A stretch of DNA of 64,000 bases from Ascidiella aspersa (GCA_963924565.1 OZ004607.1:26350001-26414000); one strand, 5' to 3'. Shown: positions 1 through 20,655, counted from the stretch's first letter. Notes: generated by a model not told the origin, from the sequence alone. Program-made: numbers and translations.

Positions 1-737
1 TGAAAGCTTTATGTTACCGTATCGCTCTGATGTTTGTTGCAATATCTGCCACGATGAAAACCTGTGAAGGAACAAGCCGTTCTCCACAGGACATCATAAC
101 CAACACGACACTAAATGAAGAAGAAAAGGCCTTTTCGGTGCTGCGTCATAACCAGGCGAGAAAAAACACAAGTCCAAGCGCTAGCAACATGCAGAAGGTC
201 TTTTGGGACGAGGAGTTGGGCGTGACGGCGCAGGAATACTCACGCAAGTGCATTTACGCTCACAGCACGGGCAGAAAGACGAGCAAGTTCGACTGGGTGG
301 GCGAGAACCTGTACGTTGGCTCGCCAGAGGTGGAGCCGATCAAGATCCTGAACACAGCGATCACGCACTGGGACGACGAGAAGTACAACTACACGTACGC
401 GACTACCGCCTGCACAGTGACGTATTGCAGCCACTATACGCAAGTGGTGTGGGATGACACTTGGGCCGTTGGCTGCGCCATGACCACCTGTCGCGACCTT
501 GACGTAGGCGACGGCGAAACATGGGAGGTCGGCCAGCTTGTTGTGTGCCATTACGGACCTGGCGGAAATCTAAACAACCGACAGCCTTTCGACCTGGGCG
601 CCCATTGCTCCGTTTGTCCAAAAGACTTTGTGTGTGAAGATAACCTTTGCACCAACTCCGCTTACCGCGTTTCGGTGCCTTTTGCTTTTCTTGTTTGGTG
701 CGCTATTTTTTTGTTTGCTTTTGCTTTTTACTTTTAA
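1..737 (+). CDS. CAP-1: CAP/SCP (GLIPR1-like) protein with signal peptide and GPI-type C-terminus; start codon probably clipped by the window edge
   Basis: CAP motifs HNQAR, NMQKVFWD, CIYAHS, GENLY, CSHYTQVVW, VGCA, VCHYGPGGN; Cys hinge CSVCPKDFVCEDNLC; hydrophobic tail ending at the stop. The frame runs upstream to positions 1-2 'tg', giving (A)TG AAA GCT TTA = MKALCYRIALMFVAISA..., a plausible signal peptide if the base before the window is A. Confidence 0.92.
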   Translation, partial: KALCYRIALMFVAISATMKTCEGTSRSPQDIITNTTLNEEEKAFSVLRHNQARKNTSPSASNMQKVFWDEELGVTAQEYSRKCIYAHSTGRKTSKFDWVGENLYVGSPEVEPIKILNTAITHWDDEKYNYTYATTACTVTYCSHYTQVVWDDTWAVGCAMTTCRDLDVGDGETWEVGQLVVCHYGPGGNLNNRQPFDLGAHCSVCPKDFVCEDNLCTNSAYRVSVPFAFLVWCAIFLFAFAFYF

Positions 738-1319
738 AGTCGCGTCGGCTTGCTAGCTTTTAGAAAATGACGAGATATTTATTGAAGAGATGGAATCTAG
801 GTTAAACGTTGTAATAAACACCTATTTCTGCTAGTGCTACAACGACAAGCAAAGCAAGGCCATTGAAAATGCTTAAAAATAGCGTTCGTCTGAAAAACTT
901 TGATTTAAAATGTTTAACTGTAAAACGTAAAATCGCTGCTTTAGTACAAAACTGTCACACATTGATCTGTAGGTGTTCCAAGCGTATCTTATATACCCGA
1001 AAAAGCGCCTAAATGTCCAAACCTTTTAGTTTTCCGTTTTAGAGAAAGGACGAAAAAGTGCAAAATTATTTGAAAAATTGTACTGCTTAATACATTTTTT
1101 TTTTGGTTTTTACAGTGTTAAATTTATTTTTAAGCTTTAAGTTCATAATATATAAACCATAAAATTAGTATTACTTAAAACATTTTTAAAACTGTTAAGC
1201 ATTAAATATATTTGTTGCGTAACACTTTTGAATTAGGGTATTTAATTACATTAATGCAAAATTATTTTGCGCGAAAATATACATTCACATATAGGCTAAT
1301 GGTCAGTTAAAGTTTATTA

Positions 1320-1383
1320 CGGTCTGCAGAGATCTTTCTGAGTTTGTTGTTTGCCGTCACTAAAAAAAGGTTGCCGATTCTTG
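1320..1383 (-). mobile_element. hAT-type MITE terminus (degenerate), inverted relative of the 1927 copy
   Basis: Reverse complement caagaatcggcaacctttttttagtg...ctcagaaagatctctgc matches the end starting at 1927. Confidence 0.5.
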
Positions 1384-1926
1384 TTTGGTCTTTGCACATT
1401 TCGCATCAAGTTTACAAAAAAACACTATTTTGTGATAAAAAACTACCCTTACGAAATGACCGCCTTATAGATAAATTGTGCTGGCATAAACACAAACAGT
1501 TTCTTATGAAGGCCTACTTCCGTGCTTTATTTGTTACCATGCTGAAACTTATTCAAATATATTCTTGCTAGTTTAATAAACTTTATTATGCTTGGATGCA
1601 AGTCGGTAGTCGTTTTAAAGATTGAGGTAACTTCTAATTAAAAAGGCTACGGTTACACTACCGCATACCCTCATAAAGATTACCCAATTTATATATTTAT
1701 GTATAGCCTAAGTGCGAGACGCGTGACCTTCCTGAAACAATCCAGGCTAAAAAATTGTGCAATACTCGTCTAATTACATGAGCAAACTAAGGTTTTACAA
1801 ACGTTATTCTTGGTATACGAATCATAGAGCTAATTTATACAATGTATATTTATTTAACATTGGCAAATAAACAAAACAGTAAACAGGACAACCGTTAACC
1901 TACGTGATTATCTCTAGACTCTAGAG

Positions 1927-1995
1927 CAGGGGTCGGCAACCTTTTTCTAGTCGCGGGCCAAAACCAACCTCAGAAAGGTCTCTGCGGGCCGCACA
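1927..1995 (+). mobile_element. hAT (Charlie/Buster-type) MITE terminus; other end not found
   Basis: caggggtcggcaacctttttctagtcgcgggcc, preceded by ctctagag (nnnTAnnn target typical of Buster-type hATs). Confidence 0.55.
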
Positions 1996-2371
1996 AAATG
2001 TTAACTAAGAATTGTGTTATTTCAATGTTGGAGAACAACTGTGAATCAATCGTGTCTCGAATCTTTTTTTGCACGTAAAAACGTGTTTAATTACATTCAG
2101 GAAGGCAGTAAACTATTAGCGCGAAAAAAGCGTTTGTTTGATTTAAAATCCGAGTACACGTCGTACTACTAATTTATACTACTAATGGAAAATGTAATAA
2201 AACTACTTTGAGGGAAAGCGTTAAACTAGTTCAGTCTTATTTATCGTTTTAAGTGAAAAGTATAGAAGGGTAATCGTTACCCAACTTCTAAAAGTTCGTC
2301 TATACATAGTATCGTGGATGTATTTCCAACCTGTCTATTACGTAGAGCGTAGTACATAAATATCGTGTGAT

Positions 2372-3325
2372 TCAGCCAAACAACGATAGTATACTGTGCA
2401 GAAAAGCAGCAAACAAAATCACTATAACGCAGTTAAACGACGTTGTTTGGGGCGAAGAGCTGCACACGTTTTCTTGGCAAGTATAGGGTGGCTCACAATC
2501 TACAGTGCACCGCGCTCCTTTCCTTGGTAAAACGTCCCTCTCGCTGTAGCAGTGGTTGATAATGCATCGGCTCGGTGATCGGCAACCGAGACAACCATTG
2601 CCTGTGTCAGGTTCTGCAATCGTGGTGACCCCGGACAGCTTTTGATCCCAGAAACAAATTCCCTCTGAGCACACGCGACCGGAGCACAGCGCGTGAGAGC
2701 AAGACGATCCGTACATATACGGGATTTTTCGGTTGAAGTTTCCGCCGTGTCCGTATTGACAAACTATAAACAGGTTCTCGGCCTGCAGCTGTCCGCGCAC
2801 AAAAACGTTGTTGCAAGTTGTCACGCCACAACCCAGCACATATGTTGTGTTCCACACAACTTGACGGTAATGCCCGCACACGCCGCCGACGCATTCCCCG
2901 GTGCGACTGTCGAAATACTGTTTTTCGTTTCCCCACGACCGTATAGATTCCCTCAGAAAAACCGGAGTCGCGCTAATCGTACCGGTCACGTACATATTCT
3001 CCCCAATGTGGTAAAACTGTTCCGATGTTCTTTCGCTTCCGCTACTGTGCTGCATTATACACCTGCCCGCGTGGCGTCTCGCTCTCTGTTCCAAATCGTT
3101 GCCCCACTGTAAGCTTGGCATGAAGGCAGCTGGTGGGTCGACTTTCTTTCTGAATTCAGTGTGCACGTCTAAAATAAGCTGCTTTTCGGATTCCGTTAGG
3201 GTTTTAAGCTGGTTACTGTTGCGTTTCAACCTGCTCTTTTCTTCGGCACAGCTTACCGCCATTGGGAAACATAGTTCGATAGAAAAGAAAGCGATTAAGG
3301 TCAATTGACAAACGGTTATCCACAT
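2372..3325 (-). CDS. CAP-2: CAP/GLIPR1-like protein with three Cys4 hinge-like modules and GPI-type tail
   Basis: First ATG at 3325 (the ORF track uses GTG at 3364) opens signal peptide MWITVCQLTLIAFF; RLKR; CIMQHS, GENMY, CGHYRQVVW, VCQYGHGGN; three Cys4 blocks; tail SSSPQTTSFNCVIVILFAAFLHSILSLFG*. Confidence 0.92.
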   Translation of the reverse strand: MWITVCQLTLIAFFSIELCFPMAVSCAEEKSRLKRNSNQLKTLTESEKQLILDVHTEFRKKVDPPAAFMPSLQWGNDLEQRARRHAGRCIMQHSSGSERTSEQFYHIGENMYVTGTISATPVFLRESIRSWGNEKQYFDSRTGECVGGVCGHYRQVVWNTTYVLGCGVTTCNNVFVRGQLQAENLFIVCQYGHGGNFNRKIPYMYGSSCSHALCSGRVCSEGICFWDQKLSGVTTIAEPDTGNGCLGCRSPSRCIINHCYSERDVLPRKGARCTVDCEPPYTCQENVCSSSPQTTSFNCVIVILFAAFLHSILSLFG

Positions 3326-3883
3326 TTCTGCCAATAACAATTTCCTGTTGTTGCAAAAAGTCACAAACTGTTGGAATTACGGCTATGCTCTCGCTGAATT
3401 ATACTAATTGTGTTTCCTTTCTGTTAAAAACACACATCCATAATGTGCTATCGGTGTTCACAGTGCTGTTAACTTTGTGTTCACTCAATTTTATGTAGGC
3501 AAACTGGTTCTGCATGTTAAAGTGCGTGTATCAGACCAGGTAGCTGTTTTACATAAACTACCACATAGGTATCACCCTAGTGTCGTTGTTATACCTAGAC
3601 GACTCATCACTTTCCGCCTAACAGATCACTTCCGGAATTACATATAACGTTTAGCACGTCATGGAAATAGGCTATTCGTCAATCTAAAATGCACTGTGCA
3701 ATACGGTTTTCAAAATGCAACAGCACATATATGTTTGGTAGTTTTATCTATAAAGCCACCATTAGTAGTACTTTAATCAAAATTTAACATGTGTACAAAA
3801 CAAAACTTGTGAATTCAAGCATTTGCAACAATGTTTATTTCGTTCGTTCAATTTAATTTGAATACAACATTCAACTGTTTTCG

Positions 3884-4663
3884 CTAATTAAAGTGCAACT
3901 GGCAGACGAAGAACAGCGTTGCGAGAATAAGGTGCAAAGAATACCTTTGTATGGTAGGTGCTCCACTAGTTTTCGAACACATGTTGTCGACGCAGTAAGG
4001 GTAATCTTTCGCGCAATCACTACATGAAGAGCCTTGCTTGTAAGGCTGCTTTCCGTAAAAGTTGCCTGCCGGGCCATAATTACAAACCACTATGGAGGAC
4101 TGAGCAAACGTGCGACCTGCAACCTGAACGTCGGCGCAATAACCAACTCCACATCCGATAGCATAAGAAGAGGCCCAGGCTACCTGTGTGTAGTGACCGC
4201 AAACTCCAGTGCAAGCTTGTGTCGCAAAATTGTACACGTTCTTTTCGTCATCCCAAGATCCCACCGCTTTTTCAAACAGATCACTGGGTTCAGTTTGAAA
4301 AAGAGTAAAGTACATGTTCTCTCCAATGGAGGACGAAAACTTGGAAGTTTTTCTAGGCGATTGAGGGCTATGTGCAAAGATGCACTTTGAAGCGTAATCT
4401 TGCGCCAATGTTTCTAATTCGTAGTCCCATTCCATCTTGAGCATGTTGCTGGCAGTAGGAGACACGATTTTCCTAGCGGCATTGTGACTCTTAACTGCTG
4501 CTTGTCTGTCTGCCTCGGTTAGTGACGTCGATTTCATTAGTGAAGCCCGTTTTACCCTTGAAAGTTCACTTTTCTGGCCAAAAGTGACAATATCAGCAGC
4601 AATCCAGAAGAACATTAGGTAGGCCAACTTCATTTTGCTAAATGCAATTCGAGTCACATTCAT
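3884..4663 (-). CDS. CAP-3: CAP/GLIPR1-like protein, GPI-type tail
   Basis: Signal peptide (start at 4663 or 4633 MKLAYLMFFWI), RVKR, HNAAR, NMLKMEWD, CIFAHS, GENMY, CGHYTQVAW, VCNYGPAGN, one hinge module, tail SGAPTIQRYSLHLILATLFFVCQLHFN*. Confidence 0.95.
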   Translation of the reverse strand: MNVTRIAFSKMKLAYLMFFWIAADIVTFGQKSELSRVKRASLMKSTSLTEADRQAAVKSHNAARKIVSPTASNMLKMEWDYELETLAQDYASKCIFAHSPQSPRKTSKFSSSIGENMYFTLFQTEPSDLFEKAVGSWDDEKNVYNFATQACTGVCGHYTQVAWASSYAIGCGVGYCADVQVAGRTFAQSSIVVCNYGPAGNFYGKQPYKQGSSCSDCAKDYPYCVDNMCSKTSGAPTIQRYSLHLILATLFFVCQLHFN

Positions 4664-5383
4664 AAATGCAAACTTTTATTTGCTAGAAAATGTCTAAAAT
4701 GACTGTGTTTTTATTTGCATTGTTACGTTTTTATAGTGACCAAATAACTAATTATTCTTTAACAAAGTCAATCATTTTGGTCCAAGTGAAAACTTGTTAT
4801 TAGTGTAGCCCAGTGGTTCTCAAACTTTTTTTGTTGCGACGCCTCTGGAAAAGTTTTCTGGACTTGGGACGCACCCGAAAATAAAAGTTAATGAGAAAAC
4901 TTATTATTTAAGTTCTTCTATTGATACAACAACAAAAAGCAATGTATATTATTGAATGTGGCGTGTGGGCTTGTTTGATTTTAAAAAGTTCATTGAATCT
5001 TGGGAGAATTTTGGAAATTACCACACGCATTTCCCTTTCTGTGTTAATTCGTGATTGATATTTGCTTTTATCACCGCCAAGGCAGAAAATCCTGCTTCAC
5101 ATAAATATAGGGCTACCATATTTTCAGCACCCAAAAAGAGGACATTTTTTTGCCTGTAAGTAAAACGAAAGTAGAATTGTTACGTTTGAGAAAAACGTGC
5201 CATATCCACAAGTAATGCATTCAGCTTTGAAATCCATACGTCCTTTTCTGAAACAAGGATACTTCTGGCTTAGCTCATCAGTAAACAGAGTTTCGGCGTA
5301 TTAATTTATTTTGCTTTATGGTTGTCTATATCTAAAGAATAATAAAGAAAAATCAAAGCATCTGCTCAAAACCACCTGTATGC

Positions 5384-5896
5384 CAGTGGTTCTTAACCTG
5401 ACCTTTTTCCAGCCGCGCCCACCTTTGGTAATTTTCCTATGTCTTTCGCTTCCCCTCCCCCCACCTACAAAAAGCAATTCGGTATTTTCAATTAAACATT
5501 ACTGAGAAAACGTGAAAATAGTGATTTTCTTGTCGGTCGCGTAATTGGTCGAGTTGGCGCTAAACGGTAAATTCGGGAGGTAAAAATAGTTCGAACGGTG
5601 AATGAGTTTTGTCGTTTATCTATAAGTTAGCAAAATTGTATTTAAATATGGCCGGTATACCTTTGATGATATGAAAACATGCAATGGCACTCAACGAGAC
5701 TTTGTGCTAAAAAAGTTGACAAACGTAGAAAAACAAGATTCGCGCGGAACGCGAAAATTTTTGGCAGTTTCAATATTCAAGTGGACAAAAAAGAGTTTCT
5801 ACAGCGCTGTAGGAGTGGTGGACAACCCAACGAAACCATTATAATCATTGCATAAAATTTAACTTAGAGCTCGCCTCCCCCGGTTAAGAACCGCTG
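5384..5896. mobile_element. hAT MITE nested inside the 5108-6607 element
   Basis: TIRs cagtggttcttaacc / ggttaagaaccgctg; flanking 8-mers degenerate (ctgtatgc / ttatacac, central TA kept). Confidence 0.72.
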
Positions 5897-5905
5897 TTAT
5901 ACACT

Positions 5906-6211
5906 TGTAGCAGTACTTCGTCACATTGTTGTTTTTACCACAGAGAATTTTTGTTTATCGCTGTATCACTATAGCCTAAATTCCTTGCAATCGCCTTTCA
6001 GTGTTTGCGTTATCTTTGCAGCAAATGTGCAAACTGTACATTTTGACATTTACTGCAAAGATAACGCAAACACTGAAAGGCGATTGCAAGGAATTTAGGC
6101 TATGGTGATACAGCGATAAACAAAAATTCTCTGTGGTAAAAACAACACGGTGATACAGCGATAAACAAAAATTATCTGTGGTAAAAACAAATGTGACGAA
6201 GTACTGCTACA
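5906..6211. repeat. Long near-perfect palindrome (about 120-bp arms, about 17-nt loop) with a 45-bp tandem duplication in the right arm
   Basis: 5906 tgtagcagtacttcgtcacatt...gcaaatgt is the reverse complement of 6046 acatttactgc...tgtgacgaagtactgctaca; ggtgatacagcgataaacaaaaatt is repeated at 6104 and 6149. Confidence 0.9.
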
Positions 6212-6884
6212 CACTAACTAGACAAGCTTCTGTAAGAAATAAGAACATAGCCACTAGGCCTGCAAAACTTTAATACCTTTGCTTTATTAATGGGCCTTTT
6301 TAGATGTGAGGTTCTGTTGCCATTTTTCTGGCGCAATGTTGGTAAAAACAATCAAGAAGGTAGGGCTGGTAGGGCAATTTGTTGGAAAACCTGTTTTAAA
6401 CCAGCAATTAAGCATGTTTCATGGATACAGTATATTTTTAGGAATAAATACAACGTCTCGCCTAAAATTCTTGTTAAAAGTATAAGCAAGTAACTCCAAA
6501 TGCGAAAAAAGAGGACATTTGAACATTTTTGAGCGTCCTCGGAGGACAATTCAGTTTTCTTGAGAAAAGAGGACAAATCCTCCTAAAAAGGAAATATAGT
6601 AGCCCTACATAAATACGACATGGCAAATGGGATAATAATTCGTAGTGCTTTCTGCACCAAAGCTGGATAATCGGCATTCATTGAAATCCAAAAGTTTGCC
6701 GATTTCCTGAATTAAACATCCTTTTCAGGGAATTGTCACAGGAATCGTCAATGTAGGCTTCTTTTTCTTCTGCAGTAAAAAATATATAGTAGGTTGGACA
6801 AAAGGGTCACGAATCCATTCGTAGTTTGATAAAAATTTAAATTGTTTTAATTAAGCAATTAATTATAAAATTGCGTTATTTAGC

Positions 6885-7195
6885 CCAATCTTTGCACATA
6901 AAAGAATTTGCTTGTTATATGCTGCTTTTATTTTATTTTTGACTTGAGTTGCTCATAATAATCGGAGGAGTTAGCCGGTTTTCATAATTTAAAGTTTTAT
7001 TTTTTTGACAAGGGCTGGACTTGAAGTTCACTTGCTCTAATTATGACTTGACTGGGACTTGACTTGGGCAACCGATGACTTGGACTGGGACTTGACTTGT
7101 TATTTATTGAAAAAGAATTGACTTGTACTTAAGTTATTTTACGAATGACTTAACTGGGACTTGAGTCATTTCAAAATGACTTGTTTTCAACACTG
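6885..7195. mobile_element. Right half of the GACTT-rich hAT-like MITE family (full copy at 62164-62677)
   Basis: gacttgact arrays ending in tcatttcaaaatgacttgttttcaacactg; aligns by eye with about 62385-62677. Confidence 0.75.
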
Positions 7196-8620
7196 AGCCT
7201 ATCTGATATAAGAAAGCATATCACAGTAGATTGTCAATAAGGTTTATCGGTTACCATTTGGGCACTTGCACTCTTATACTTAACTTTACAAGCAATAGGT
7301 TGCCTGCTTTAACAGGAATTTTGGTCAAGTAAGTATAGTTACAGTGGTATTATGCAAATTTCACAAAAAATGTTTTTATTTGACTGCTATTGTGTAAATT
7401 AGACCGCAGCCTGCTACGCTTAACAATGCGTGAGAAACCTGAGATGAAATACAAAAATTTAGTACACGAACAAGGCAGAACAGTGGGTGTTCTGTTGGTA
7501 TCGCCTCGTATCGGCATATTTAATGTAAGCTCAGGCTTGGCTAGCAGACAGGGCCGTTTCTTTTAGCAATTTGGCTAGTTGTAAACAAATGAGACTAAGG
7601 CATTAAAATATAAGCAAAAAATGTATATTAATCTTTCGGGGTCAGAAATAGCGTACGCAGATGGAACATTCTACAGATTTGAAGTAAGAATATTTTTCTG
7701 TCCACTAGAACCACAGATATGAATTAAAAAAATTAAAATAAGTCCACAATTAATACCTTGGATAATGTTTAATGTTGACAAAGCAAAGCTTTTAGATTGG
7801 CATTTTTAGCGAATTACATAGTTTTAACTAAACAATTTGTTGAGTTCAGCCGTAGATCCCCTAAATATTCTTTTTTGCTATATTCCGTTTGGTAATAGAC
7901 AATCCACACACATTATATTTTAGATTTACTCTAGAGTAGCCTACTTAAATCGATCTACACTTATTTCATAACAGGAATCTCAAGAGAAACCATGTTTCAC
8001 AGGTGATTGCATGTCGATTCAAGCAACAATGCTCACTACCCTAAATTTTATCGAATTAAGGCTTATTGTAACAAGAAAGTGTCTATGTAGTCGTACCACG
8101 TGACTCACACACTGCAACAGTTAATGTGACGCACTGTTACGCACATATGACGAATTTAGGAAGTTACGTTACAAGAAAGTCGAGTGGATGCTGATAAAGT
8201 TTCATCACAATAAAACGGCCCGTCTTTTTTTCTCTTAAAGGTTAATTGTTTATTAACAGTTCACATCCGTCAATAGATTAACCCGCAGTAATTAGGAAAA
8301 TTGCATTGTTCTAAGTGTTGAAGCAAATGTTTTATCTATCCTAGCCTATAAACCAGTAAATGGGTTCAAGCTGTTAGAAGGCAACAAGTGGGAGATTGGC
8401 TGATATTCTCTTGGCTATTTAATAATTTTTTTCGGGAAATATATCTTTAAATATTTTGGTGTTTTGAGCCCGGGCCCAAACTATTAGTGAGCGTGGGTCA
8501 CCAAACTGTTAAGGTTTTTACACCATACAATCAACCAAACCATTAGGCAGTCATTGTAAGAATAACAATATTGGATAAAAGCTGCGATAAACGATGTCGG
8601 GGTTTTCTACAATATAGATC
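7196..8620 (+). repeat. 1.4-kb non-coding direct repeat, copy A
   Basis: Colinear and highly similar to 11093-12970, from agcctatctgatataagaa to ggttttctacaatatagat. Confidence 0.93.
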
Positions 8621-9076
8621 GACTTCAACGAAACGATACATGTATTTTATTTAAAACATCTTTTGCTCTTTTCTTTTCTTTGTTTTTTCTAGGCTAAATC
8701 TGATTACAATTAACACAATAATACTACAATACATTGCTATAAATCGATTTCCCCTAGTTTTGGCCCACCCCAAGCCAAATTTTGTTTATAATAATCATTT
8801 TTGTAACAGACATGTGCTCATGGAAAGACAAACTTTAACAAGAATGCTTTCAGAACCAAGTTCTCCACGATGGTATACTGCAATTCGTAATAAACCAAAG
8901 AAAATATATTCCAGGATGCTGGGGTGAAAATATATAAATTTTTGGCATTTATTGTGTGCATTTGTAATCAGTTTCAACGTTTCACGTAAAGCTAATGAAG
9001 TAATACTCAAATTAATAAAAAGCAACTACTATTAGCAAACAGCAATGTTACAAAGCTCAGAAGAAAGAAGACTTAG

Positions 9077-10252
9077 TTAACCAGAAGCAACAAGGGCGCA
9101 GAAAATTCCCAGGGATGTTGCAAGCAAATGTGGAGCTTTAGGTTTGAGCGACGTTGGCGCAGAAGATGTGGTGCTGGTGAATTCAGTGGTCGAATAAATC
9201 GTCACAGAAGTCACCTCGGTTGTGCTTAATGTTGATGCAGGTCGTACTGCAGATACAGTTGAACTAAAATCAGCATCTGTAGATACTGGTAACCTACCTG
9301 TAACTGAAGGTTTGACGGCTGTGCTAAGTAATGTCGGTTTTGGAGAGCTCGAATGCGTAGTCGACGACTGCTGAACGGTTGTATATGGCCGAGGAAGGAT
9401 TTCTTCTGTATGAGGCAGCCGTGCCGAAGGGACACTCTCATCTGTATCTGTAGGTGTTGGCGAATGATCGGGAAAGGTATCAGCGTCAGTCAAAACTCTG
9501 GTATCCAGAGAAGTAGGTGCTTTCGTCGAGAATGCTTTTTCCTCTTCTGGCGGACCAGCTGGTTGCTCGCTTGTCTGGACGACGCACAATTTGTTTTCAC
9601 ACGCCGAGTGCGCTTCGGTGCAAGCAGAGCACCAGTCGCCTGCCTCGTAAGGCTGGCCGAGTTCCTCCGCAGTCGGTGCGTAATCGCACACAACCAGGAC
9701 GGCCGAGCTGGAACTACTCGAACCCAAAACCATGCTGGAACAAACGGTCGCACCGCATCCCACTTTATTTGTGTTGGCCCACGTCAGCTGCTTGTACTGA
9801 CCACACTGCGAATCGCACTTGTCCGACTCGTAGCGGTAGTTGGTGCGTTGGTCGTGCCACCAGAGCACTGCTTTCTCCAGGTTTTCGGTAACATTAGCGA
9901 TTGCTGTGATGCTAAAATAAAGGTTCTCGCCGACCTGAGCAACACTTCCTGGATTCCTGTTCGGGTTCATCTTGTAGACGCACTTTCGGCTGTGGGATTC
10001 GGCGATTTCTGCCAGCTCGTCGCTCCATGCAAGTTTAAGCATGTCGCTGGCGGCAGGTTCGACCGAGCGACGAAACTCGTTGTGCTTATTAACAATCGCT
10101 CGCTGCTCGGCCTGAGTCAGTTTAACAGCGTCACGCACAGACGACCCTCCTCGTTTGCTTCGAGAAATTATTTTGCTGTTTTCCGCCTCGACTACGGAGC
10201 GACAACTAACGCTGACCAGCAAATATACGACTGAAATCTTGCGCAAACACAT
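9077..10252 (-). CDS. CAP-4: divergent CAP protein with Ser/Thr/Pro mucin-like stalk and GPI-type tail (PI16-like architecture)
   Basis: ATG at 10252 opens signal peptide MCLRKISVVYLLVSVSC (the ORF track starts at a non-ATG codon, 10354); RSKR; HNEFRR, DMLKLAWS, GENLY, VGCG; hinge CSACTEAHSACENKLC; about 140-aa S/T/P stalk; tail SSAPTSLKPKAPHLLATSLGIFCALVASG*. Confidence 0.92.
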   Translation of the reverse strand: MCLRKISVVYLLVSVSCRSVVEAENSKIISRSKRGGSSVRDAVKLTQAEQRAIVNKHNEFRRSVEPAASDMLKLAWSDELAEIAESHSRKCVYKMNPNRNPGSVAQVGENLYFSITAIANVTENLEKAVLWWHDQRTNYRYESDKCDSQCGQYKQLTWANTNKVGCGATVCSSMVLGSSSSSSAVLVVCDYAPTAEELGQPYEAGDWCSACTEAHSACENKLCVVQTSEQPAGPPEEEKAFSTKAPTSLDTRVLTDADTFPDHSPTPTDTDESVPSARLPHTEEILPRPYTTVQQSSTTHSSSPKPTLLSTAVKPSVTGRLPVSTDADFSSTVSAVRPASTLSTTEVTSVTIYSTTEFTSTTSSAPTSLKPKAPHLLATSLGIFCALVASG

Positions 10253-11092: not shown

Positions 11093-12970
11093 AGCCTATC
11101 TGATATAAGAAGGCATATCAGAGTAGATTTTTAATAAGGTTTATCGGTTACCATTTGGACACTTGCACTCTTATACTTAACTTTACAGGCAATAGGTTGG
11201 CAAAAAGTTTGGTCAAGTGAGTATAGTTACAGTGTTATTATGCAAATTTCACAAAAAATGTCCAGGTTGTATTTATTTGACAGCCATTGTGTAAATTAGT
11301 CCGCAGCCTGCTACGCTTAGCGATGCGTGAGAAACCTGAGATGAAATACAAAAAATTTAGTACACGAACAAGGCAAAACAGCGGGTGTTATGTTGGTATC
11401 GCCTCATATCGGCATATTTAATGTAAGCTCAGGCTTGGCTAGCAGACAGTGCCGTTTCTTTTAGCAATTTGGCTAGTTGTAAACAAATGAGTCTAAGGCA
11501 ATAAAATATAAGCAAAAAATGTATATTAATCTTTCGGGGACAGAAATGGCGTACGCAGATGGAACATTCTACAAATTTGAAGTAAGAATACTTTTTTGTC
11601 CACTAGAACCACAGATATGAATTCAAAAATTAAGATAAGTCCCCAATGAATACCTTGGATAATGTTTAACGTTGACAAAGCAAAGCTTTAGATTGGTATT
11701 TTAAGCGAATTATATAATTATAACAAATTGTTGAGTTCAGCCGTAGATCCTTTAAATATTCTTTTTTGCTATGTTCCTTTCGTAATAGACAACCTACATA
11801 CGTTATTTTTTAGATTTACTCTAGGGTAACCTACTTAAATCGATCTAAACTTATTACTTAAAACGAATCGTAAAAGAAAACATATTTCACAGGTGATTGC
11901 ATGTCCATCCAAACAACATACAATACTCACTACCCAAAATTTTATCGAATTTAAGGTTATCCTTACACCAGGGGTTCTTAAACTGGGGTCCATGGATCCC
12001 TTGGGGGTCCGTGAACTAGTTTAAGGGGGTCCATGAAGTTATAATTGAAATATTAGTGTATATTTAAGAAGTAATCAGATTATTAAAGAAAACAATTTAA
12101 TCAAAAATAAAACGGTTTTGCACTAAATGTATTTAGACTCCATTTCACTTTCACATTTTTGGACCAAAATCAGCTAATTTATGAAGTCTATTTGTATTGT
12201 GACGTCAATTTATGACGTCATTTTTTTGCCTATTGTGACGTCAATTTATGACGTCATTTTTTTTGCCTATTGTGACGTCAATTTATGACGTCATTTTTTT
12301 TTTGTCCGCGCGAGATGAAAGAGAATTTTAGGGGTCTGCGCTAGAAAAAAGTTTAAGAACCCCTGCCTTATACTAACAGGAAAGAGCCAATGTAGTCGTG
12401 CCACGTGACTCACACACTGCAACAGATAATGTGACGCACACATGACGAATTTAGGAAGTTACGTTACAAGAAAGTCGAGTGGATGCTGATAAAGTTTCAT
12501 CGCAATAAAACAGCCCGTCTTTTTTGTCTTAAAGGTTAATTGTTTATTAACTGTTCACATCCGTTAATAGATTAACCCGCAGTAATTAGGCAAACTGCAT
12601 TGTTCTAAGTGTTGAAGCAAATGTTTTATCTATCCTAGCCTGTAAACCAGTAAATGGGTTTAAGCTGTTAGAAGGCAACAAGTGAAGGACGTGATGATTA
12701 GTTAAACCAGGTTACAAAACCAAATTATTGACGAAGTTCTTAGGTAGATTGGCTGATATTCTCTTGGCTCTTTAATAATTTTTCGGGAAATAAATCTTTA
12801 AATATATTGGTGTTTTGAGCCCGGGCCCAAATTATTAGTGAGCGTGGGTCACCAAACTGTTAAGGTTTTTATACCATACTATCAACCAAACCATTAGGCA
12901 GTCATTGAAAGAATAACAGTATTTGATAAAAGCTGCGATAAACGATGTCCGGGTTTTCTACAATATAGAT
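11093..12970 (+). repeat. 1.4-kb direct repeat, copy B (interrupted by a MITE; carries about 55 bp absent from copy A)
   Basis: Colinear with 7196-8620; extra segments at 11969-12373 and about 12685-12742. Confidence 0.93.
11969..12365. mobile_element. hAT MITE containing a triplicated unit with six TGACGTCA palindromes
   Basis: Perfect 16-bp TIRs caggggttcttaaact / agtttaagaacccctg; TSD ccttacac / ccttatac; absent from the paralogous site in copy A (about 8060). Confidence 0.9.
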
Positions 12971-13358
12971 GACTCGCTTACCGAAAAGCGATAACGAACC
13001 TTTGTAGTAGCAACATTGTATTGTCATATTCTGCGGGGTCACGCTCACCTGGGTTCTATCTACCCGTAAAACCTGAAACATTTTCAGTTGCGTTGCTTCT
13101 GTATCTGTTCATGCGTTTATATCGATATGTGCGGAAGTGATTTTCATGTTCGTTAGCATTGGTGTTCCTGTTTTAGAAGAACTTTTGTCTGCAGAGCGCA
13201 TGGGTTTACCACGTATCTGACCGTATGTCACTCCGCACTTGAAAAATGCAACTAAGAATAAGTACGAAATATTAGAACTACAATAAAATTTTTGTTTTCA
13301 GAAAGGTAGGAATAACTTGCTTTATTGGTGATGAGCTTTGAGTTAAAAATATTTTGAA

Positions 13359-14099
13359 ATGAAGTTTCTCGGCTTTGTACTTATTTGGGTGACTGTCACC
13401 AGTTGCGCAGACAATGAGAACGTACTGAAAAGGTCAAAACGCGGGACTTTAGATAATGCAGCCTCGATAACTCAACAAGTCAAGGAAAAAGCCGTTGCAA
13501 GTCACAACAAGGCTAGAAGCACTGTTTCGCCCACCGCTTCTGATATGCTTTTAATGAAGTGGGATGAAGGTTTAGGCAATCTGGCACAAGAGTATTCGAA
13601 AAAATGCTTGTTCGAACATAGCTCAAATCGTCAGACCGCCAATTTCACATCATGGATTGGCGAGAATCTCTACATTACCACTGGGACATTCGCACCGGCA
13701 GACTTGTTGGTGAAAGCCACCGAAAGCTGGGATGCCGAGAGAAAGGATTATATATATTCGACGTCGGCGTGCACCAAAGTTTGCGGTCACTACACTCAGG
13801 TCGCCTGGTCGTCTTCATATGCCCTTGGATGTGGTGCCAGCTCTTGCAGCAACGTGTATATCGACAAGACTACAACGTACAAGAAAGCAATGATAGTGGT
13901 GTGTAACTATGGCCCAGGCGGAAATCTTCGCGGCTCAAAGCCGTACAAAACAGGAACTCCCTGCAGTGCCTGTCCCAGCGAATACAAACATTGTGTCGAA
14001 AATATGTGCTCTAAGACCGGTGGTGCCCCTGCAATCAACGCTAATATGTTGCATGTTTGTGTTGCTGTTCTTTGTGCTGCTTTATTTTCTTTACAGTGA
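13359..14099 (+). CDS. CAP-5: CAP/GLIPR1-like protein, GPI-type tail
   Basis: MKFLGFVLIWVTVTSCA signal, RSKR, HNKAR, CLFEHS, GENLY, CGHYTQVAW, VCNYGPGGN, hinge, tail GGAPAINANMLHVCVAVLCAALFSLQ*. Confidence 0.95.
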   Translation: MKFLGFVLIWVTVTSCADNENVLKRSKRGTLDNAASITQQVKEKAVASHNKARSTVSPTASDMLLMKWDEGLGNLAQEYSKKCLFEHSSNRQTANFTSWIGENLYITTGTFAPADLLVKATESWDAERKDYIYSTSACTKVCGHYTQVAWSSSYALGCGASSCSNVYIDKTTTYKKAMIVVCNYGPGGNLRGSKPYKTGTPCSACPSEYKHCVENMCSKTGGAPAINANMLHVCVAVLCAALFSLQ

Positions 14100-17000: not shown

Positions 17001-17929
17001 CGGCACTTATTTGGTTGGGCATCAACTTGTTGTCCTGGAAGCAAAGTTTATATTGATCCATTTAGAGCAGAGTTTTTTAAATGCTCCTAAAATGAGTACT
17101 TCAATTCTTAACGCCATAATGTTAATGTATATTTTGTTTGATTTCCCAATTATTTTTCGCAAAAGTGTAATAATATATTCCTACAAAGAAATGTACCACT
17201 CAACTCAGGATGGGCATTGGGCAACTAAACAAAGGCAGAGACTTAATTTTCTCAACACTACATTACCGACTTCATTTTATTTTTGAACCTAATAGATATC
17301 ATGCATTGCCGTTTTGATAGATTCAATATTTAAATTTGGCGTAAGTCTGAAACTTTCATCCGAAACAGGGCAATATTCTAATGTGGTTTTGTTCCCTGCA
17401 TTATTTTATTTTGCGATTGATAAATCTCAACCTTGATGATTGTGGGTATAAATCCCCTTGGCATATTTTCTATTTGACAAATCTTGTACCCTTTGATGTA
17501 TTGCAACAACAGTGCTCCACTTGGCTATTCAAAAAGTAAACCAAAGTAAGTTAATATCAGGTCTTGGTAAATATTAGATTTCATAAAACAAAAAGTTATC
17601 GGTCTTCTTGTATGATGATTATGACTCGCGAACACAATACTGTTTCCCCGCTGTTCTTAACACCCTTTTTATTTATATTTTATTGCTAAAACTATAAAAA
17701 GCACAATACCATCAATGTATACTGTCAATGTTAGTCATATATATTAGTAAACGTACTTTTAAACCATTCATATACTCCGTCGGACGTATACGGATATTAT
17801 TTCATTCTTACCGTTCGTAAAAGCACCATAAATGCAGTGTATGTTTAAAAAGCTAATCAGAACGCAAACATGAGACGAAAGATGGTTTAAATCAGTCTAT
17901 TTTGATATAATATATAAAAGGTTGATATT

Positions 17930-19189
17930 ATGAGGCACAATTTTATTTTTTACATATTGAGCTTGATAACGGGAGTTCTTTAAAGTAAAACTATTACATA
18001 GGAACCCAAAGATGTCATGATGGCAGGGCTGCGGAGTCGGTTGAAAACAATCCGAGTCCGACTCCGGCCAAAAAAATACACCCGAGTCCGACTCCCGAGT
18101 CCCGAGTCCGACTCCGGCCAAATGTAAGATTTTGTCGAGTCCCGAGTCCAGCTCTGACTCTACAGCCTGTATTTTACCCATTTACGCAACTAAATCAAGG
18201 TGGATTTTCTGCAATCCACTTATATTGGTGCCATAATTGATCCACCCGTATTACATGGTTTAAAAATATTTCACCATTTGCTATAACACTTTTACAACTT
18301 ACATTTTTCCGCTTTAACAGTTTCAAAATTTGATACTGCGCATGCGCACGTCGGACTCGGGACTCGGGTAGTTTTACGCGGTCTTACTCGAGTCCCGAGT
18401 CCGACTCCGGCAAAACAAACCGACTCCGTCGAGTGCCGAGTGCCGAGTGCCGAGTGCCGAGTGCCGAGTGCCGAGTGCCGAGTGCCGAGTGCCGAGTGCC
18501 GAGTGCCGAGTCCGACTCCGACTCCGCAGCCCTGCGTGAGGGTTAAGCGAGGAACTTTGACAATGGCTGTGCGCTGTGCAGTCAAGCAAGGCAAACATGC
18601 AACCAATTCTCGCTGGTCACAAGATATTAAGAACCAACGTGCGACCGACGGCCCAATATGGTCGAAATGCAGTGGGACGAAAACCTCGCAAAATCGCTCA
18701 AGCTGACTCGGAACGATGTAGATTCATGCACAACCATAACCGATCGTCAAACTTCTCAACTTCAGTTGGCGAGAATTTGTACCTTACGAGCCGAACTGGC
18801 GCAGTCGCCAATGTGCTATTTACCGCGACCAATTCCTGGGGATTAGAAGCGCTAGATTATACGTACAACAACAGATCTTGCCAAGGTTTTTGCGAACAAT
18901 ACACAGATGGTTTGGGCGAAATCACTTGCAGTTGGATGTGGGGTCAGCTTTTGCGCCAACATTAGCGGTTTACCTCAGGCTACTTTTTTTGTTTGCAACT
19001 ACAGCCCTGCTGGCAATGAACGGAGAATGGATTCATATTTACAAGGGGGCTCCCTGTACCAGGTGTCCTCACAGCCACCCTTTCTGTAACGGAAGATTGT
19101 GTACAGCATCAGGATCACCTTCTGTCATCGTCCGCAACTGGCTCGTTTCCGCGTTCGTAATCTACGCCGTATTCTTCATTTTGATTTAA
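17930..19189 (+). pseudogene. CAP-6 pseudogene (two early stops, at least four frameshifts, MITE insertion in the propeptide)
   Basis: TATATAAAAG at 17911; ATG 17930 MRHNFIFYILSLITGVL*SKTIT*EPKDV, then after the MITE VRVKRGTLT. Fragments in shifting frames: HKILRTNVRPTA, NMVEMQWDENLA, CRFMHN..GENLY..CEQYT, QMVWAKSLAVGCG..VCNYSPAGN, CTRCPHSHPFCNGRLC..FVIYAVFFILI*. Confidence 0.88.
18024..18534. mobile_element. hAT-like MITE with CCGAGT/CCGACT subterminal repeats and a (CGAGTGC)11 tract
   Basis: 17-bp TIRs cagggctgcggagtcgg / ccgactccgcagccctg; TSD catgatgg / cgtgaggg (6/8); heptamer array 18430-18506. Confidence 0.88.
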
Positions 19190-19821
19190 TACAAAACCTT
19201 CGGTATAATATTGGATAAAAGAACCTGGCAAGCATAACGCTGTCCTTACATGCGCGAGTCCAATATTTGTTCGTTGTGTACTCCATTAAACACATTTATT
19301 CACAAATATTCATAATAAAAGACAAATAACACACACAAAAACATTTCTGGGGCGTATAAAGAGTTGGTAAGTAAAATATATATTTTCAATTAAAAGATGT
19401 TCTTTTAAAATGTAGAAGACCTCATAAACAAAAGCGTCCAGACGACGGAACAGAAGTTAGGCATGAACGCTGCACAAACTTTACTTTAATCAGGAACAAA
19501 TGGATTGATTCAGTAAATTATATAAAAATGTCAACAAATATTATCAGTGCCGTTTGAATAGGAACCTGCACACTTAACTGGGTTGGACGAAAAACACCAA
19601 AAACTTCGCAGTCAATATTGCATCAAAGCGTACCGTAATAGCAAGGATAAAAATATGATACAGGGCTTCGAGAATACCATTGTGAAATTGAAAACAAACT
19701 TCCTAGACGCCACCGTGATCTTTACCATATTTTGGGGGTTTTACAAATTCTGGATATGTTTTCATCATAGTTTTTAAAGTATAGTCATAGTAGTTATGTG
19801 TCCCTCGTCTTATTGTATGCC

Positions 19822-20655
19822 TTATAGAACCAGGCCTACCGCTAAAAAAACCTGAAATACAAGCGAAATCCACAAGTGAAATAATGGTATTGATAGTATT
19901 GTTGCTGCTGAGCATAAGTGGTTTATACATGTTGTGTAGTTTGCGGGACAAGCATCACATAGTATTGTTGCTGCTGAGCATAAGTGGTTTATACATGTTG
20001 TGTAGTTTGCGGGACAAGCATCACACGGACGTCCTTGGATGTAAGGCTTCCCACCAACGTTACCGCCTGGCCCATAGTTGCAAACCACAAATGTGGCGGT
20101 CTTATAAAAGTTGCCATTTCCAATGTCGACATTGCTGCAATGGCTTACACCACAACCAACAGCATAAGTGTTGGCCCAAACCATTTGAGTGTAGTGGCCA
20201 CAGGGTTTTCCTCGCGTACACGATAAAGTTGTGTAGGTGTAATCCTTCCGTTCAGCATCCCATCTTTCAGCTGCTCTCTTCAATATTGCTGAAGCTGTTT
20301 GGCTAGTTCCAGTAGCTAAGTATAGGTTTTCACCATTATATTTAGAAAAATTTTCCGTCTTTCGAGTATTACTTTCGCTGTGCTTGTACAGGCACTTTCT
20401 TGAGTAATCTTCTGCCAGTTTTCCTAGACCCTCATCCCATTTCATCTGAAGCATGTTGGATGCTGTTGGTGACACGGTTCTTCTGGCTTTATTGTGACTG
20501 TCGACTACTTCTTGTTTATTGGCTGCTGTCAGTGAAAGCGCATTCGTCAATGTCCCTCGTTTGATTCGAAGACCTTGGGTGTCTTGGTTTGCAGATGTTA
20601 ACAAACATAGGCCCACCACAGTAAGAGCCGAAACTGTTTCTTTTAAACTCATCAT
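19822..20655 (-). CDS. CAP-7: CAP/GLIPR1-like protein with exactly duplicated hinge module, GPI-type tail
   Basis: Signal peptide, RIKR, HNKARR, CLYKHS, GENLY, CGHYTQMVW, VCNYGPGGN, (CDACPANYTTCINHLCSAATIL)x2, hydrophobic tail. Confidence 0.94.
   Translation of the reverse strand: MMSLKETVSALTVVGLCLLTSANQDTQGLRIKRGTLTNALSLTAANKQEVVDSHNKARRTVSPTASNMLQMKWDEGLGKLAEDYSRKCLYKHSESNTRKTENFSKYNGENLYLATGTSQTASAILKRAAERWDAERKDYTYTTLSCTRGKPCGHYTQMVWANTYAVGCGVSHCSNVDIGNGNFYKTATFVVCNYGPGGNVGGKPYIQGRPCDACPANYTTCINHLCSAATILCDACPANYTTCINHLCSAATILSIPLFHLWISLVFQVFLAVGLVL
19893..20024. repeat. Exact in-frame 66-bp tandem duplication inside CAP-7
   Basis: atagtattgttgctgc...acaagcatcac begins at 19893 and again at 19959. 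Confidence 0.95.

What the first reader, a model, noticed from the sequence alone, without database searches (positions are those of the whole stretch)
1..20655. Diversifying array of seven GPI-type CAP genes: candidate cell-surface (gamete or self/non-self) recognition repertoire
Seen: seven paralogues in 21 kb (orientations + - - - + + -), none with a coding intron although every neighbouring gene is spliced, each with signal peptide, CAP domain, Cys hinge and GPI-like tail. They are strongly diverged, one is dead, one has a fresh internal duplication and one has lost most of the CAP tetrad. Established: ascidian Urabin (Halocynthia, Ciona) is a GPI-anchored GLIPR1/CRISP-like sperm raft protein that binds vitelline-coat proteins. 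Inference: a birth-and-death cluster of Urabin-like surface ligands from one intron-poor or retroposed founder. The cluster may extend left of the window.
Basis: partly seen in the sequence, partly recalled or inferred. Interest (0 to 1): 0.75.

Follow-up and report, generated by a model that had tools for sequence, protein, structure and literature searches.

The report
Sea-squirt cluster of Urabin-like CAP genes
A sea-squirt chromosome carries an old tandem cluster of single-exon genes for small cell-surface proteins related to the sperm protein Urabin; the cluster is real and tidy, but nothing tested here shows it to be a fast-diversifying recognition repertoire.

Summary
Window 1-20655 has seven CAP (PF00188) paralogues in the stated orientations. 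Six are intact single ORFs with a hydrophobic N-terminus, a CAP domain, a 4-Cys hinge and a hydrophobic C-terminal tail with no cytoplasmic residues. One copy (C6) is dead, C7 has a perfect 66-bp internal duplication, and C4 keeps 1 of 4 tetrad residues.

Corrections: the array does not continue left. The next copy (C8, intact, 73% identical to C7) lies about 209 kb away. C2 carries three hinge modules.

The best named relative is CiUrabin at 41%.
- The family is old: dS is saturated in 20 of 21 pairs.
- The one usable pair has omega 0.41-0.46 overall and 0.24 in the CAP domain.
- A second individual differs by only 0.46% over copies 1-3.
- C1 has a 63-67% identical relative elsewhere.
- In one RNA run of unknown tissue, C3 is strongly transcribed and unspliced, and C1 is silent.

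The same scan already noted C4 in this window (s1-791217) and a multi-CAP gene elsewhere in this genome (s1-792923). Verdict: new members of a known kind. The GPI anchor, sperm role and recognition role remain untested.

The parts
1..737 (+). C1: intact single-ORF CAP gene of 245 aa. The A of its ATG is the base just left of the window. It keeps all four tetrad residues and has no RxKR site. Not transcribed in the one RNA run.
   Evidence: Starred sister P0187 at 63-67% identity.
2372..3325 (-). C2: intact 317-aa CAP gene on a very long branch, with three hinge-like 4-Cys modules (22 Cys) before the hydrophobic tail. RNA depth is about 0-1.2x, no higher than the read-through level downstream of C3.
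   Evidence: Best identity in 1.84 billion representatives is at most 42%. Of the 5 listed coding differences in a second individual, 4 change the protein.
3884..4663 (-). C3: intact 259-aa CAP gene. It is the expressed copy, at about 74x depth in RNA run X4 with the strand sense consistent, and none of the listed joints lies in it.
4729..4735 (-). TATAAAA box 72 nt upstream of the C3 ATG. It fits the upstream limit of RNA cover.
3834..3839 (-). AATAAA signal 45 nt after the C3 stop codon. It fits the downstream limit of RNA cover.
7196..8624 (+). Copy A of a local direct repeat that flanks C4. It has only two copies in the genome, 89-94% identical.
9077..10252 (-). C4: intact 391-aa CAP gene. 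The tetrad is reduced to the Glu of GEN (H>K/M, E>Q, H>Q). A stalk of about 135 aa, 50% Ser/Thr/Pro, lies between the hinge and the hydrophobic tail.
   Evidence: No hit at E<=1e-5 among 1339 candidates for residues 1-240.
11093..12974 (+). Copy B of the local direct repeat. It is interrupted at 11960-12367 by a high-copy mobile element that carries six TGACGTCA palindromes.
13359..14099 (+). C5: intact 246-aa CAP gene, a member of the starred clade C3/C5/C7/C8.
18024..18532 (.). MITE-like insert with 17-nt terminal inverted repeats and a (CGAGTGC)x12 microsatellite, sitting where the leader of C6 should be.
18536..19189 (+). C6: pseudogene. Its CAP, hinge and tail remnants are spread over three frames with stops, and there is no leader. 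The RVKR remnant is still visible.
19822..20655 (-). C7: intact 277-aa CAP gene with two identical hinge modules.
19894..20025 (-). Perfect 2 x 66-bp tandem duplication inside C7. It duplicates 22 codons covering the hinge and the residues just before the tail.

Best explanation
Window 1-20655 is an old, locally rearranging tandem family of compact single-exon genes in a sea-squirt genome. There are six live genes and one dead one, plus an eighth copy about 209 kb away.

Each live gene encodes a small secretory-pathway protein with the following parts in order:
- a signal peptide;
- usually a dibasic R-x-K-R site that probably marks a short propeptide cut by a furin-type convertase (inferred);
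- a GLIPR1/Urabin-type CAP domain;
- a 4-Cys hinge;
- a stalk of variable length;
- a C-terminal signal of the kind that is exchanged for a GPI anchor (inferred from sequence and from the PI-PLC result reported for HrUrabin).

The proteins would therefore sit on the outer face of the plasma membrane as lipid-anchored CAP heads. By analogy with Ciona and Halocynthia Urabin, at least one of them probably serves as a non-polymorphic binding partner for egg-coat proteins on sperm (inferred, not tested).

The copies differ mainly in three ways:
- what lies between head and anchor: one, two or three hinge modules, or a mucin-like stalk;
- whether the metal-binding tetrad is kept;
- expression.

C1 is a conserved lineage. 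C3, C5, C7 and C8 form a clade that no outside sequence in my sample joins. The evidence points to purifying or relaxed selection rather than diversifying selection.
For: Family and architecture:
- CAP domain in 6 of 7 ORFs.
- The best solved relative is GLIPR1 3q2r, E 1.2e-38, and the alignment runs through the hinge.
- The best named protein is CiUrabin (41% identity, 93% coverage).
- All 7 intact copies have a hydrophobic leader and an uncharged hydrophobic tail of about 17-22 residues that reaches the C-terminus, preceded by small-residue triplets. CiUrabin has the same. A vertebrate GLIPR1 instead ends in a charged tail after its hydrophobic stretch.
- Review passages confirm that Hr/CiUrabin are GPI-anchored sperm CAP proteins binding VC70/VC57 (PMC9265791).

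RxKR site:
- Strict R-x-K-R occurs in C2, C3, C4, C5 and C7 and in the C6 remnant. C8 has K-R only.
- CiUrabin (KQKR) and C. savignyi H2YDM6 (RPKR) match the looser [RK]-x-[KR]-R pattern used.
- By eye, further tunicate relatives carry it too.
- R-x-[KR]-R matches 11 of 145 fetched homologues. None of the 11 is a vertebrate protein. Nine are bivalve or unnamed with the same N-terminal motif as the named bivalves, one is C. savignyi and one is a crinoid.

Single exon.

Age and selection. There is no DNA-level similarity between copies apart from the R repeat and the C7 duplication.

Trees:
- {C3,C5,C7,C8} has support 97/94* and 97/95*.
- {C1,P0187} has 100/98*.
- The Styela clava proteins form their own starred clade.

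Expression:
- C3 about 74x, C2 about 1x or less, C1 zero, in RNA run X4.
- C3 has a TATA box and an AATAAA signal that fit the limits of cover.

Stalks: hinge modules number 1 (C1, C3, C4, C5, C8), 2 (C7) or 3 (C2). The C4 stalk is 50% S/T/P.
Against: - No GPI or signal-peptide predictor was available. The anchor rests on my heuristic and on analogy.
- The tissue of the only RNA run is unknown, so no sperm or testis link is shown. Only copies 1-3 were laid.
- C1, the copy closest to the conserved lineage and 49% identical to CiUrabin by BLAST, is silent in that run.
- The grouping with CiUrabin is weak (81/58) and the backbone is unresolved.
- C2 and C4 sit on long unplaced branches.
- No HrUrabin sequence could be obtained, so orthology to the founding member was not tested.
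- Furin processing is purely inferred.
- The polymorphism estimate rests on the contig consensus of one other individual, and 17 rows of that table were not shown.
Confidence: 0.7

Rival explanations
1. One reading: the array is a diversifying repertoire of surface ligands. Its variety is maintained by selection for gamete or self/non-self recognition.
For: - There are many diverged paralogues (23-50% identity).
- Turnover is visible: a pseudogene, a fresh duplication and a segmental repeat.
- Urabin binds an allorecognisable coat protein (PMC9265791).
- C2 shows 4 non-synonymous against 1 synonymous among its listed differences between two individuals.
- Stalk variants recall HrUrabin-L, whose C-terminal repeats abolish VC70 binding.
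Against: - Omega is 0.24 in the CAP domain of the only unsaturated pair.
- All other pairs are saturated at synonymous sites, so the divergence is old rather than rapid.
- Overall difference from a second individual is 0.46%, and the listed coding differences (8 in 2471 bp) are fewer than the non-coding ones.
- C1 has a relative of 63-67% identity in another source.
- HrUrabin is described as not highly polymorphic (PMC7344649).
- Expression is very unequal: one copy dominates among the three tested.
Confidence: 0.08
2. The proteins are surface or shed CAP proteins of somatic tissues, for example blood cells, epidermis/tunic or gut. They would work in defence, lipid/sterol binding or matrix interactions, and have nothing to do with gametes.
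For: - C3 is transcribed at a high level in a general RNA-Seq run, whereas C1, the copy nearest the CiUrabin-like conserved lineage, is silent there.
- CAP proteins have many non-reproductive roles. This is established background, mentioned in the passages of PMC6824042 read.
- The nearest non-tunicate relatives are bivalve PI15/PI16-like proteins of unknown role.
Against: - The tissue of the RNA run is unknown and may include gonad.
- The only functionally studied proteins with this architecture in tunicates are sperm proteins.
- CiUrabin is the best named hit for C3.
Confidence: 0.2
3. Only part of the array is functional. C2 and C4 are redundant copies drifting towards loss, and their odd features (extra hinge modules, lost tetrad, mucin stalk) are decay rather than new function.
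For: - Their end branches are the longest (2.4-2.6 and 1.6-1.9 changes per column).
- C2's RNA signal is no higher than read-through.
- C2 has 4 of 5 listed coding polymorphisms changing the protein.
- C4 has lost 3 of 4 tetrad residues and has no hit at E<=1e-5.
- One neighbour, C6, is already dead.
Against: - Both keep long open frames (317 and 391 codons) despite saturated synonymous divergence.
- Both keep all framework cysteines, the leader, the RxKR site and the tail. That is hard to explain without constraint.
- C4 expression was not measured.
Confidence: 0.15

Closest known systems
CiUrabin (Ciona intestinalis) and HrUrabin / HrUrabin-L (Halocynthia roretzi): GPI-anchored sperm-surface CAP proteins
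   Same: - The architecture is the same: leader, CAP/PR domain, 4-Cys hinge, short linker and hydrophobic GPI-type tail.
- CiUrabin is the best named hit for C3 (41%) and is 40-44% identical to C1, C3, C5, C7 and C8 in the alignment (33% to C4, 31% to C2; up to 53% over shorter BLAST stretches).
- CiUrabin has a dibasic site (KQKR) at the position of the RxKR site.
- C-terminal stalk variation has a precedent in HrUrabin-L.
   Different: - There are eight copies here, against one or two described.
- Orthology is unresolved.
- No expression, localisation, PI-PLC or binding data exist for these copies.
- The stalk variants are hinge-module repeats and a mucin-like stretch, not hexapeptide repeats.
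- One copy lacks the tetrad.
- The HrUrabin sequence could not be compared.
Vertebrate GLIPR1 / GLIPR1L1
   Same: - GLIPR1 (PDB 3q2r) is the best solved-structure match (E 1.2e-38), with the hinge aligned.
- GLIPR1L1 is a sperm raft protein that is GPI-linked in some species (PMC6824042, passages).
   Different: - Vertebrate GLIPR1/GLIPR1L1 form their own starred clade that excludes all window copies (100/99*, 100/98*).
- The GLIPR1 sequence used as a control ends in a charged tail after its hydrophobic stretch.
- None of the 11 fetched homologues that match R-x-[KR]-R is a vertebrate protein.
- That vertebrate genes are multi-exon is recalled, not tested here.
Bivalve 'PI15-like / PI16-like / R3HDML-like' CAP proteins
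   Same: - They are the nearest non-tunicate group in one tree (86/87).
- They are 39-47% identical to C3.
- They share an RxKR/RxRR site shortly before the first CAP helix.
   Different: - Many carry a Kringle domain (PF00051) and are longer.
- Their function is unknown.
- The backbone of the second tree does not resolve the relationship.

Membership tests
CAP superfamily (PF00188) | CAP domain profile match above the curated cut-off | tested here: met
   6 of 7 window ORFs score 55-73 bits against a 21.1-bit cut-off. The pseudogene C6 has no match. C8 also matches, in the genome scan.
CAP superfamily (PF00188) | Conserved His/Glu/Glu/His tetrad of the CAP cavity (the motif assignment is recalled; positions were read from the alignment) | tested here: met
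   All four residues are present in C1, C2, C3, C5, C7 and C8. C4 keeps only the Glu of GEN, so 1 of 4.
CAP superfamily (PF00188) | Alpha-beta-alpha sandwich fold | not tested
   No structure was predicted. The only evidence is sequence matches to 19 solved CAP chains, the best being GLIPR1 3q2r at E 1.2e-38.
GLIPR1 subfamily (vertebrate) | Groups with vertebrate GLIPR1/GLIPR1L1 in a tree | tested here: not met
   The vertebrate clade is starred (100/99*, 100/98*) and excludes every window copy.
GLIPR1 subfamily (vertebrate) | 4-Cys hinge after the CAP domain | tested here: met
   The pattern C-x2-4-C-x4-7-C-x4-C occurs once in C1, C3, C4, C5 and C8, twice in C7 and three times in C2. It aligns with the GLIPR1 hinge.
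Urabin (ascidian sperm GPI-anchored CAP protein) | C-terminal GPI-attachment signal | tested here: inconclusive
   My own heuristic only. All 7 intact copies have an uncharged hydrophobic tail reaching the C-terminus, preceded by a short spacer and small residues, as in CiUrabin. NetGPI and PredGPI were not available.
Urabin (ascidian sperm GPI-anchored CAP protein) | Release from sperm by PI-PLC, and location on the sperm head surface | not testable with these tools
   This is a bench assay. The property is reported for HrUrabin and CiUrabin in PMC9265791 (passages).
Urabin (ascidian sperm GPI-anchored CAP protein) | Testis-specific expression | tested here: inconclusive
   One RNA run of unknown tissue was laid on copies 1-3 only. 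C3 reaches about 74x, C2 about 1x or less, and C1 zero.
Urabin (ascidian sperm GPI-anchored CAP protein) | Binds the EGF/ZP vitelline-coat protein (VC70/VC57) | not testable with these tools
   This needs a far-western or pull-down experiment.
Urabin (ascidian sperm GPI-anchored CAP protein) | Orthology to CiUrabin/HrUrabin | tested here: inconclusive
   A tunicate group that includes CiUrabin, C1, C2 and the C3/5/7/8 clade has support of only 81/58. The backbone is open. The HrUrabin sequence was not obtainable.
Allorecognition / gamete-specificity determinants (e.g. Themis, fuhc type) | High allelic polymorphism | tested here: not met
   This is a weak test, using the contig consensus of one other individual. 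It differs at 21 of 4518 bp (0.46%) over C1-C3, and 8 listed differences fall in 2471 coding bp. 17 table rows were not shown. Copies 4-7 were not tested.
Allorecognition / gamete-specificity determinants (e.g. Themis, fuhc type) | Excess of non-synonymous change (omega > 1) in the binding domain | tested here: not met
   C7-C8 has omega 0.41 (NG86) and 0.46 (YN00), with 0.24 in the CAP domain. The other 20 pairs are saturated and uninformative.

The most novel reading that the evidence does not exclude
The cluster encodes a graded set of lipid-anchored CAP heads held at different heights above the membrane: one, two or three hinge modules, or a stalk of about 135 residues. One head has its metal site abolished. 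The copies would be used in different cells or stages. Hinge-module multiplication has happened twice independently here (an old event in C2 and a brand-new one in C7). No tandem hinge of this kind was seen among the 311 proteins fetched; the only two pattern matches are C-terminal Cys patterns in two giant proteins. Stalk length would then be the selected variable, tuning which coat or matrix partner the CAP head can reach. HrUrabin-L's C-terminal repeats, which switch off VC70 binding, would be the precedent.
Probability: 0.12. Interest if true: 0.55.

Novelty: new member of a known kind. Interest (0 to 1): 0.3.

Why it matters
Urabin is one of the few named sperm-side partners of the ascidian egg coat, and it has been studied as a single gene, or as a gene plus one isoform. 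This locus shows that in at least one sea squirt the Urabin-type architecture exists as eight single-exon copies. These include a conserved lineage (C1), a clade that no outside sequence in my sample joins (C3/C5/C7/C8), and natural variants in stalk length and in the metal site.

That gives a ready-made panel for asking which part of the protein matters for coat binding. It also cautions against treating any one 'GLIPR1-like' hit as the Urabin orthologue.

The conserved RxKR site, shared with bivalve relatives, suggests a propeptide step that I did not find described in the passages I read. Apart from this, it is an ordinary tandem gene family.

Tried and rejected
Full-length single ORFs called on large ENA contigs (P0175, P0302, P0005, P0001) hint that the intronless state is shared. 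I do not know how those genes were called.
- HrUrabin: it did not appear among the 120 listed hits. The 2008 JBC and 2011 MRD papers are not held. No comparison with HrUrabin or with a true vertebrate PI15 was therefore made.
- dN/dS: NG86 returned saturated dS for 17 of 21 pairs and dS above 2 for three more. YN00 failed for 20 of 21. Only C7-C8 is usable.
- Retroposition test on the youngest pair: C7-C8 similarity stops inside the coding region at both ends, and no poly(A) remnant is seen. At dS 0.43 neutral flanks would be unalignable anyway, so the test is uninformative.
- R repeat as LTRs: I considered that the direct repeat flanking C4 could be the LTRs of an element. It has only two copies in the genome plus an 80-bp match, and I found nothing else to support that, so I record it as a local segmental repeat.
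- TGACGTCA array as an enhancer: I considered the six palindromes at 12200-12293 as a possible cluster enhancer. They lie in a high-copy mobile element (3959 first-look candidates), so I rejected it as cluster-specific.
- Non-coding RNA: the Rfam scan of the window found nothing.
- C4 residues 1-240: no hit at E<=1e-5 among 1339 candidates. Only proteins of 215-684 aa were eligible, so this says little.
- Structure prediction, the ESM Atlas, SignalP and NetGPI were not used or not available.
- Supplementary files were not consulted. Sperm proteome tables of the Ciona papers could bear on which paralogues are on sperm.
- Searches for prior description of such clusters found only reviews of Urabin itself. 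No paper on a Urabin-type gene cluster was seen in those listings.

Full report
**What is there**

The window is G000:C1:26350001-26414000 of a 308.6-Mb assembly. Earlier notes of this scan take it for a sea squirt. The protein hits fit that: Ciona, Styela and Clavelina are among the closest named relatives.

Between 1 and 20655, the ORF listing finds seven CAP-type ORFs in the orientation + - - - + + -. Pfam's CAP model passes its cut-off in six of the seven.

Trimmed to the first ATG, the intact genes are:

| Copy | Window position | Strand | Length |
|---|---|---|---|
| C1 | 1-737 | + | 245 aa |
| C2 | 2372-3325 | - | 317 aa |
| C3 | 3884-4663 | - | 259 aa |
| C4 | 9077-10252 | - | 391 aa |
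| C5 | 13359-14099 | + | 246 aa |
| C7 | 19822-20655 | - | 277 aa |

The A of C1's ATG is the base just left of the window.

C6 (about 18536-19189, +) is a pseudogene:
- Its remnants of the RVKR site, CAP domain, hinge and tail are spread over three frames with stops.
- It has no leader.
- Where the leader should be sits a 509-bp element with 17-nt terminal inverted repeats. That element has thousands of first-look candidates in the genome: 4360, of which the 40 scored include copies of 90-96% identity.

**Extent of the family**

A search of the whole assembly with C3 gives 23 matches. A search with PF00188 gives 16.
- The array does not continue to the left.
- The only other full-length copy, C8 (251 aa, intact), lies about 209 kb to the left.
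- Only these seven intact genes hold the whole CAP domain in one open frame.
- The other nine PF00188 matches are partial or contain stops, as expected of spliced genes.

**Anatomy of the proteins**

Each intact copy has the following features:
- a hydrophobic N-terminal stretch;
- a CAP domain;
- a C-x2-4-C-x4-7-C-x4-C hinge;
- an uncharged hydrophobic tail that runs to, or within three residues of, the C-terminus. The tail is preceded by a short spacer and small residues (N-S-A, S-S-S, S-G-A, S-S-A, G-G-A, S-A-A).

CiUrabin has the same layout. A vertebrate GLIPR1 used as control ends in a charged tail after its hydrophobic stretch. This is the form of a GPI-attachment signal, but it rests on my heuristic only.

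Tetrad: the His/Glu/Glu/His tetrad is complete in all copies but C4, which keeps one of four residues.

Stalk: what varies most is the part between head and tail.
- C2 has three hinge-like modules and 22 cysteines.
- C7 has two identical modules.
- C4 has a stretch of about 135 residues that is 50% Ser/Thr/Pro.
- In the 311 proteins fetched, only two giant proteins matched the tandem-module pattern, and they have a different C-terminal Cys pattern.
- The C7 duplication is 2 x 66 bp with no mismatch. I could not check it against reads.

- An R-x-K-R site lies a few residues after the leader in C2, C3, C4, C5 and C7 and in the C6 remnant.
- C8 has K-R only. C1 has none.
- CiUrabin (KQKR), C. savignyi H2YDM6 (RPKR) and, by eye, most other tunicate relatives printed have a dibasic site at the same place.
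- R-x-[KR]-R also occurs before the first CAP helix in 11 of 145 fetched homologues. None of the 11 is a vertebrate protein. Nine are bivalve or unnamed with the same N-terminal motif as the named bivalves, one is C. savignyi and one is a crinoid.
- I infer a short propeptide removed by a furin-type convertase. This is not tested.

**Relatives**

- For C3 the best named hit is CiUrabin (41% identity, 93% coverage), ahead of bivalve PI15/PI16-like proteins and vertebrate GLIPR1.
- The best solved structure is GLIPR1 3q2r (E 1.2e-38).
- Review passages confirm that CiUrabin and HrUrabin are GPI-anchored sperm CAP proteins that bind VC57/VC70. They also say that HrUrabin-L, with C-terminal hexapeptide repeats, does not bind VC70 (PMC9265791).

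First tree (47 rows):
- {C3,C5,C7,C8} is starred (97/94*).
- A tunicate group with CiUrabin, C1 and C2 has only 81/58.
- C4 is a long branch without a stable place.
- Vertebrate GLIPR1/GLIPR1L1 are a separate starred clade.
- An AU test does not reject all seven own copies being one clade (p = 0.114).

An exhaustive search with C2 found no representative above 42% identity. It did bring in named Styela clava, Clavelina and further Ciona proteins.

Second tree (45 rows):
- C1 is starred sister (100/98*) to an unnamed Logan protein of 63-67% identity, with an ENA pair next to them.
- {C3,C5,C7,C8} is again starred (97/95*), with no outside member.
- The Styela proteins form their own starred clade.
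- C2 and C4 remain unplaced and the backbone is open.

So C1 belongs to a conserved lineage. In my sample, which is thin for ascidians, C3/5/7/8 are joined by no outside sequence, which fits an expansion in this species' lineage.

**Age and selection**

- Amino-acid identity inside the window is 23-50%. C7-C8 are 73% identical.
- No DNA-level similarity is left between copies.
- Synonymous sites are saturated in 20 of 21 pairs.
- For C7-C8, dN is 0.18 and dS 0.43, giving omega 0.41-0.46. By region, omega is 0.24 in the CAP domain and about 1 in the leader/propeptide and the tail.
- The last 105 bp of that pair are 94% identical against 82% upstream. dS is 0.21 in the second half of the CAP domain against 1.23 in the first, which suggests gene conversion.

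**Reads** (window 1-6000)

DNA contigs:
- Run X1 matches the window without differences.
- Run X2, another sample of the same study, differs at 9 of 1935 and 12 of 2583 bases (0.46%).
- Of the differences listed, 8 fall in the 2471 coding bases: C1 has 2 synonymous, C3 has 1 synonymous, and C2 has 1 synonymous and 4 non-synonymous, all in its C-terminal extension or tail. 17 table rows were not shown.

RNA run X4 (same species label, tissue unknown, about 6% of the run read):
- It covers C3 at about 74x. First mates lie on the + strand, as expected for an RNA from the - strand.
- None of the listed joints lies between 3800 and 4800 (4 further rows are not shown).
- A TATAAAA box 72 nt upstream of the ATG and an AATAAA signal 45 nt after the stop fit the limits of cover.
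- C1 has no reads.
- C2 has 0-1.2x, no more than the 1.2-1.5x seen in the spacer downstream of C3. It may be read-through.

**Reading**

Assigning the genes to the Urabin/GLIPR1-type CAP proteins is sound at the level of architecture and nearest relatives.

Strict membership of 'Urabin' cannot be decided. Its defining properties are experimental (PI-PLC release, sperm surface location, VC70/VC57 binding), and orthology is unresolved.

The 'diversifying recognition repertoire' reading finds no support in the tests I could run. The copies are old, the only measurable omega is well below 1, polymorphism over three copies is ordinary, and one copy is conserved across sources. A review also states that HrUrabin is not highly polymorphic (PMC7344649, passages). 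These tests are weak, resting on two individuals, one pair and one RNA run. The reading is therefore lowered, not excluded.

Gene death (C6), module duplication (C7, C2) and a 1.4-1.9-kb direct repeat flanking C4 do show continuing local turnover. That repeat has only two copies in the genome, 89-94% identical.

**Limits**

- The primary Urabin papers are not held.
- No HrUrabin or true PI15 sequence was compared.
- Supplements were closed and not consulted.

Noticed in passing
window 7196-8624 and 11093-12974: A direct repeat of 1.4-1.9 kb, 89-94% identical, flanks C4. It occurs nowhere else in the genome except for one 80-bp match. It is far younger than the genes around it and could mediate loss or gain of C4 by unequal recombination.
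   Followed up: partly
window 11960-12367 (palindromes at 12200-12293): A high-copy mobile element (3959 first-look candidates) sits inside repeat copy B. It carries six TGACGTCA palindromes in a 37-bp x 2.9 array. The window has 10 such palindromes against 0.72 expected.
   Followed up: partly
window 18024-18532: A MITE-like element with 17-nt terminal inverted repeats and a (CGAGTGC)x12 microsatellite. The genome holds many copies of 90-96% identity.
   Followed up: partly
window 1900-2200 and 4850-5800: Very high-copy repeats between the CAP genes. Summed contig depth is 10^4 to 10^5 against about 55-120 for single-copy DNA. They are transcribed on both strands at low level in the RNA run.
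   Followed up: no
window 5921-6153: An inverted repeat with 113-nt arms, 95% complementary, 7 nt apart. It lies in the repeat-rich spacer right of C3.
   Followed up: no
window 19855-19959 versus L003:2131-2235: The 3' end (hinge to tail) of C7 and of the distant copy C8 is 94% identical, against 82% for the rest of the coding region. Synonymous divergence drops from 1.23 to 0.21 along the CAP domain. A gene conversion tract between copies 209 kb apart is likely.
   Followed up: partly
N-termini of C2, C3, C4, C5, C6 and C7 (e.g. window 4546-4557 on the minus strand for C3): A conserved R-x-K-R site lies just after the leader. It is shared with Ciona and other tunicate relatives and with bivalve homologues, and none of the matching homologues is a vertebrate protein. 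C1 has lost it, although its closest relative P0187 has RSRR.
   Followed up: partly
window 29945-31948: This is the only ORF of 130 aa or more (667 aa) in the 43 kb right of the cluster. It lies within the stretch that another first-reader note (s1-791261) calls a TSR receptor. I did not examine it.
   Followed up: no
G000:C1:24.66-24.69 Mb: A second group of CAP-domain matches lies 1.66 Mb to the left, all in pieces or with stops, so probably spliced genes. It may relate to the multi-CAP gene of note s1-792923 and to the two-CAP-domain protein P0001.
   Followed up: no
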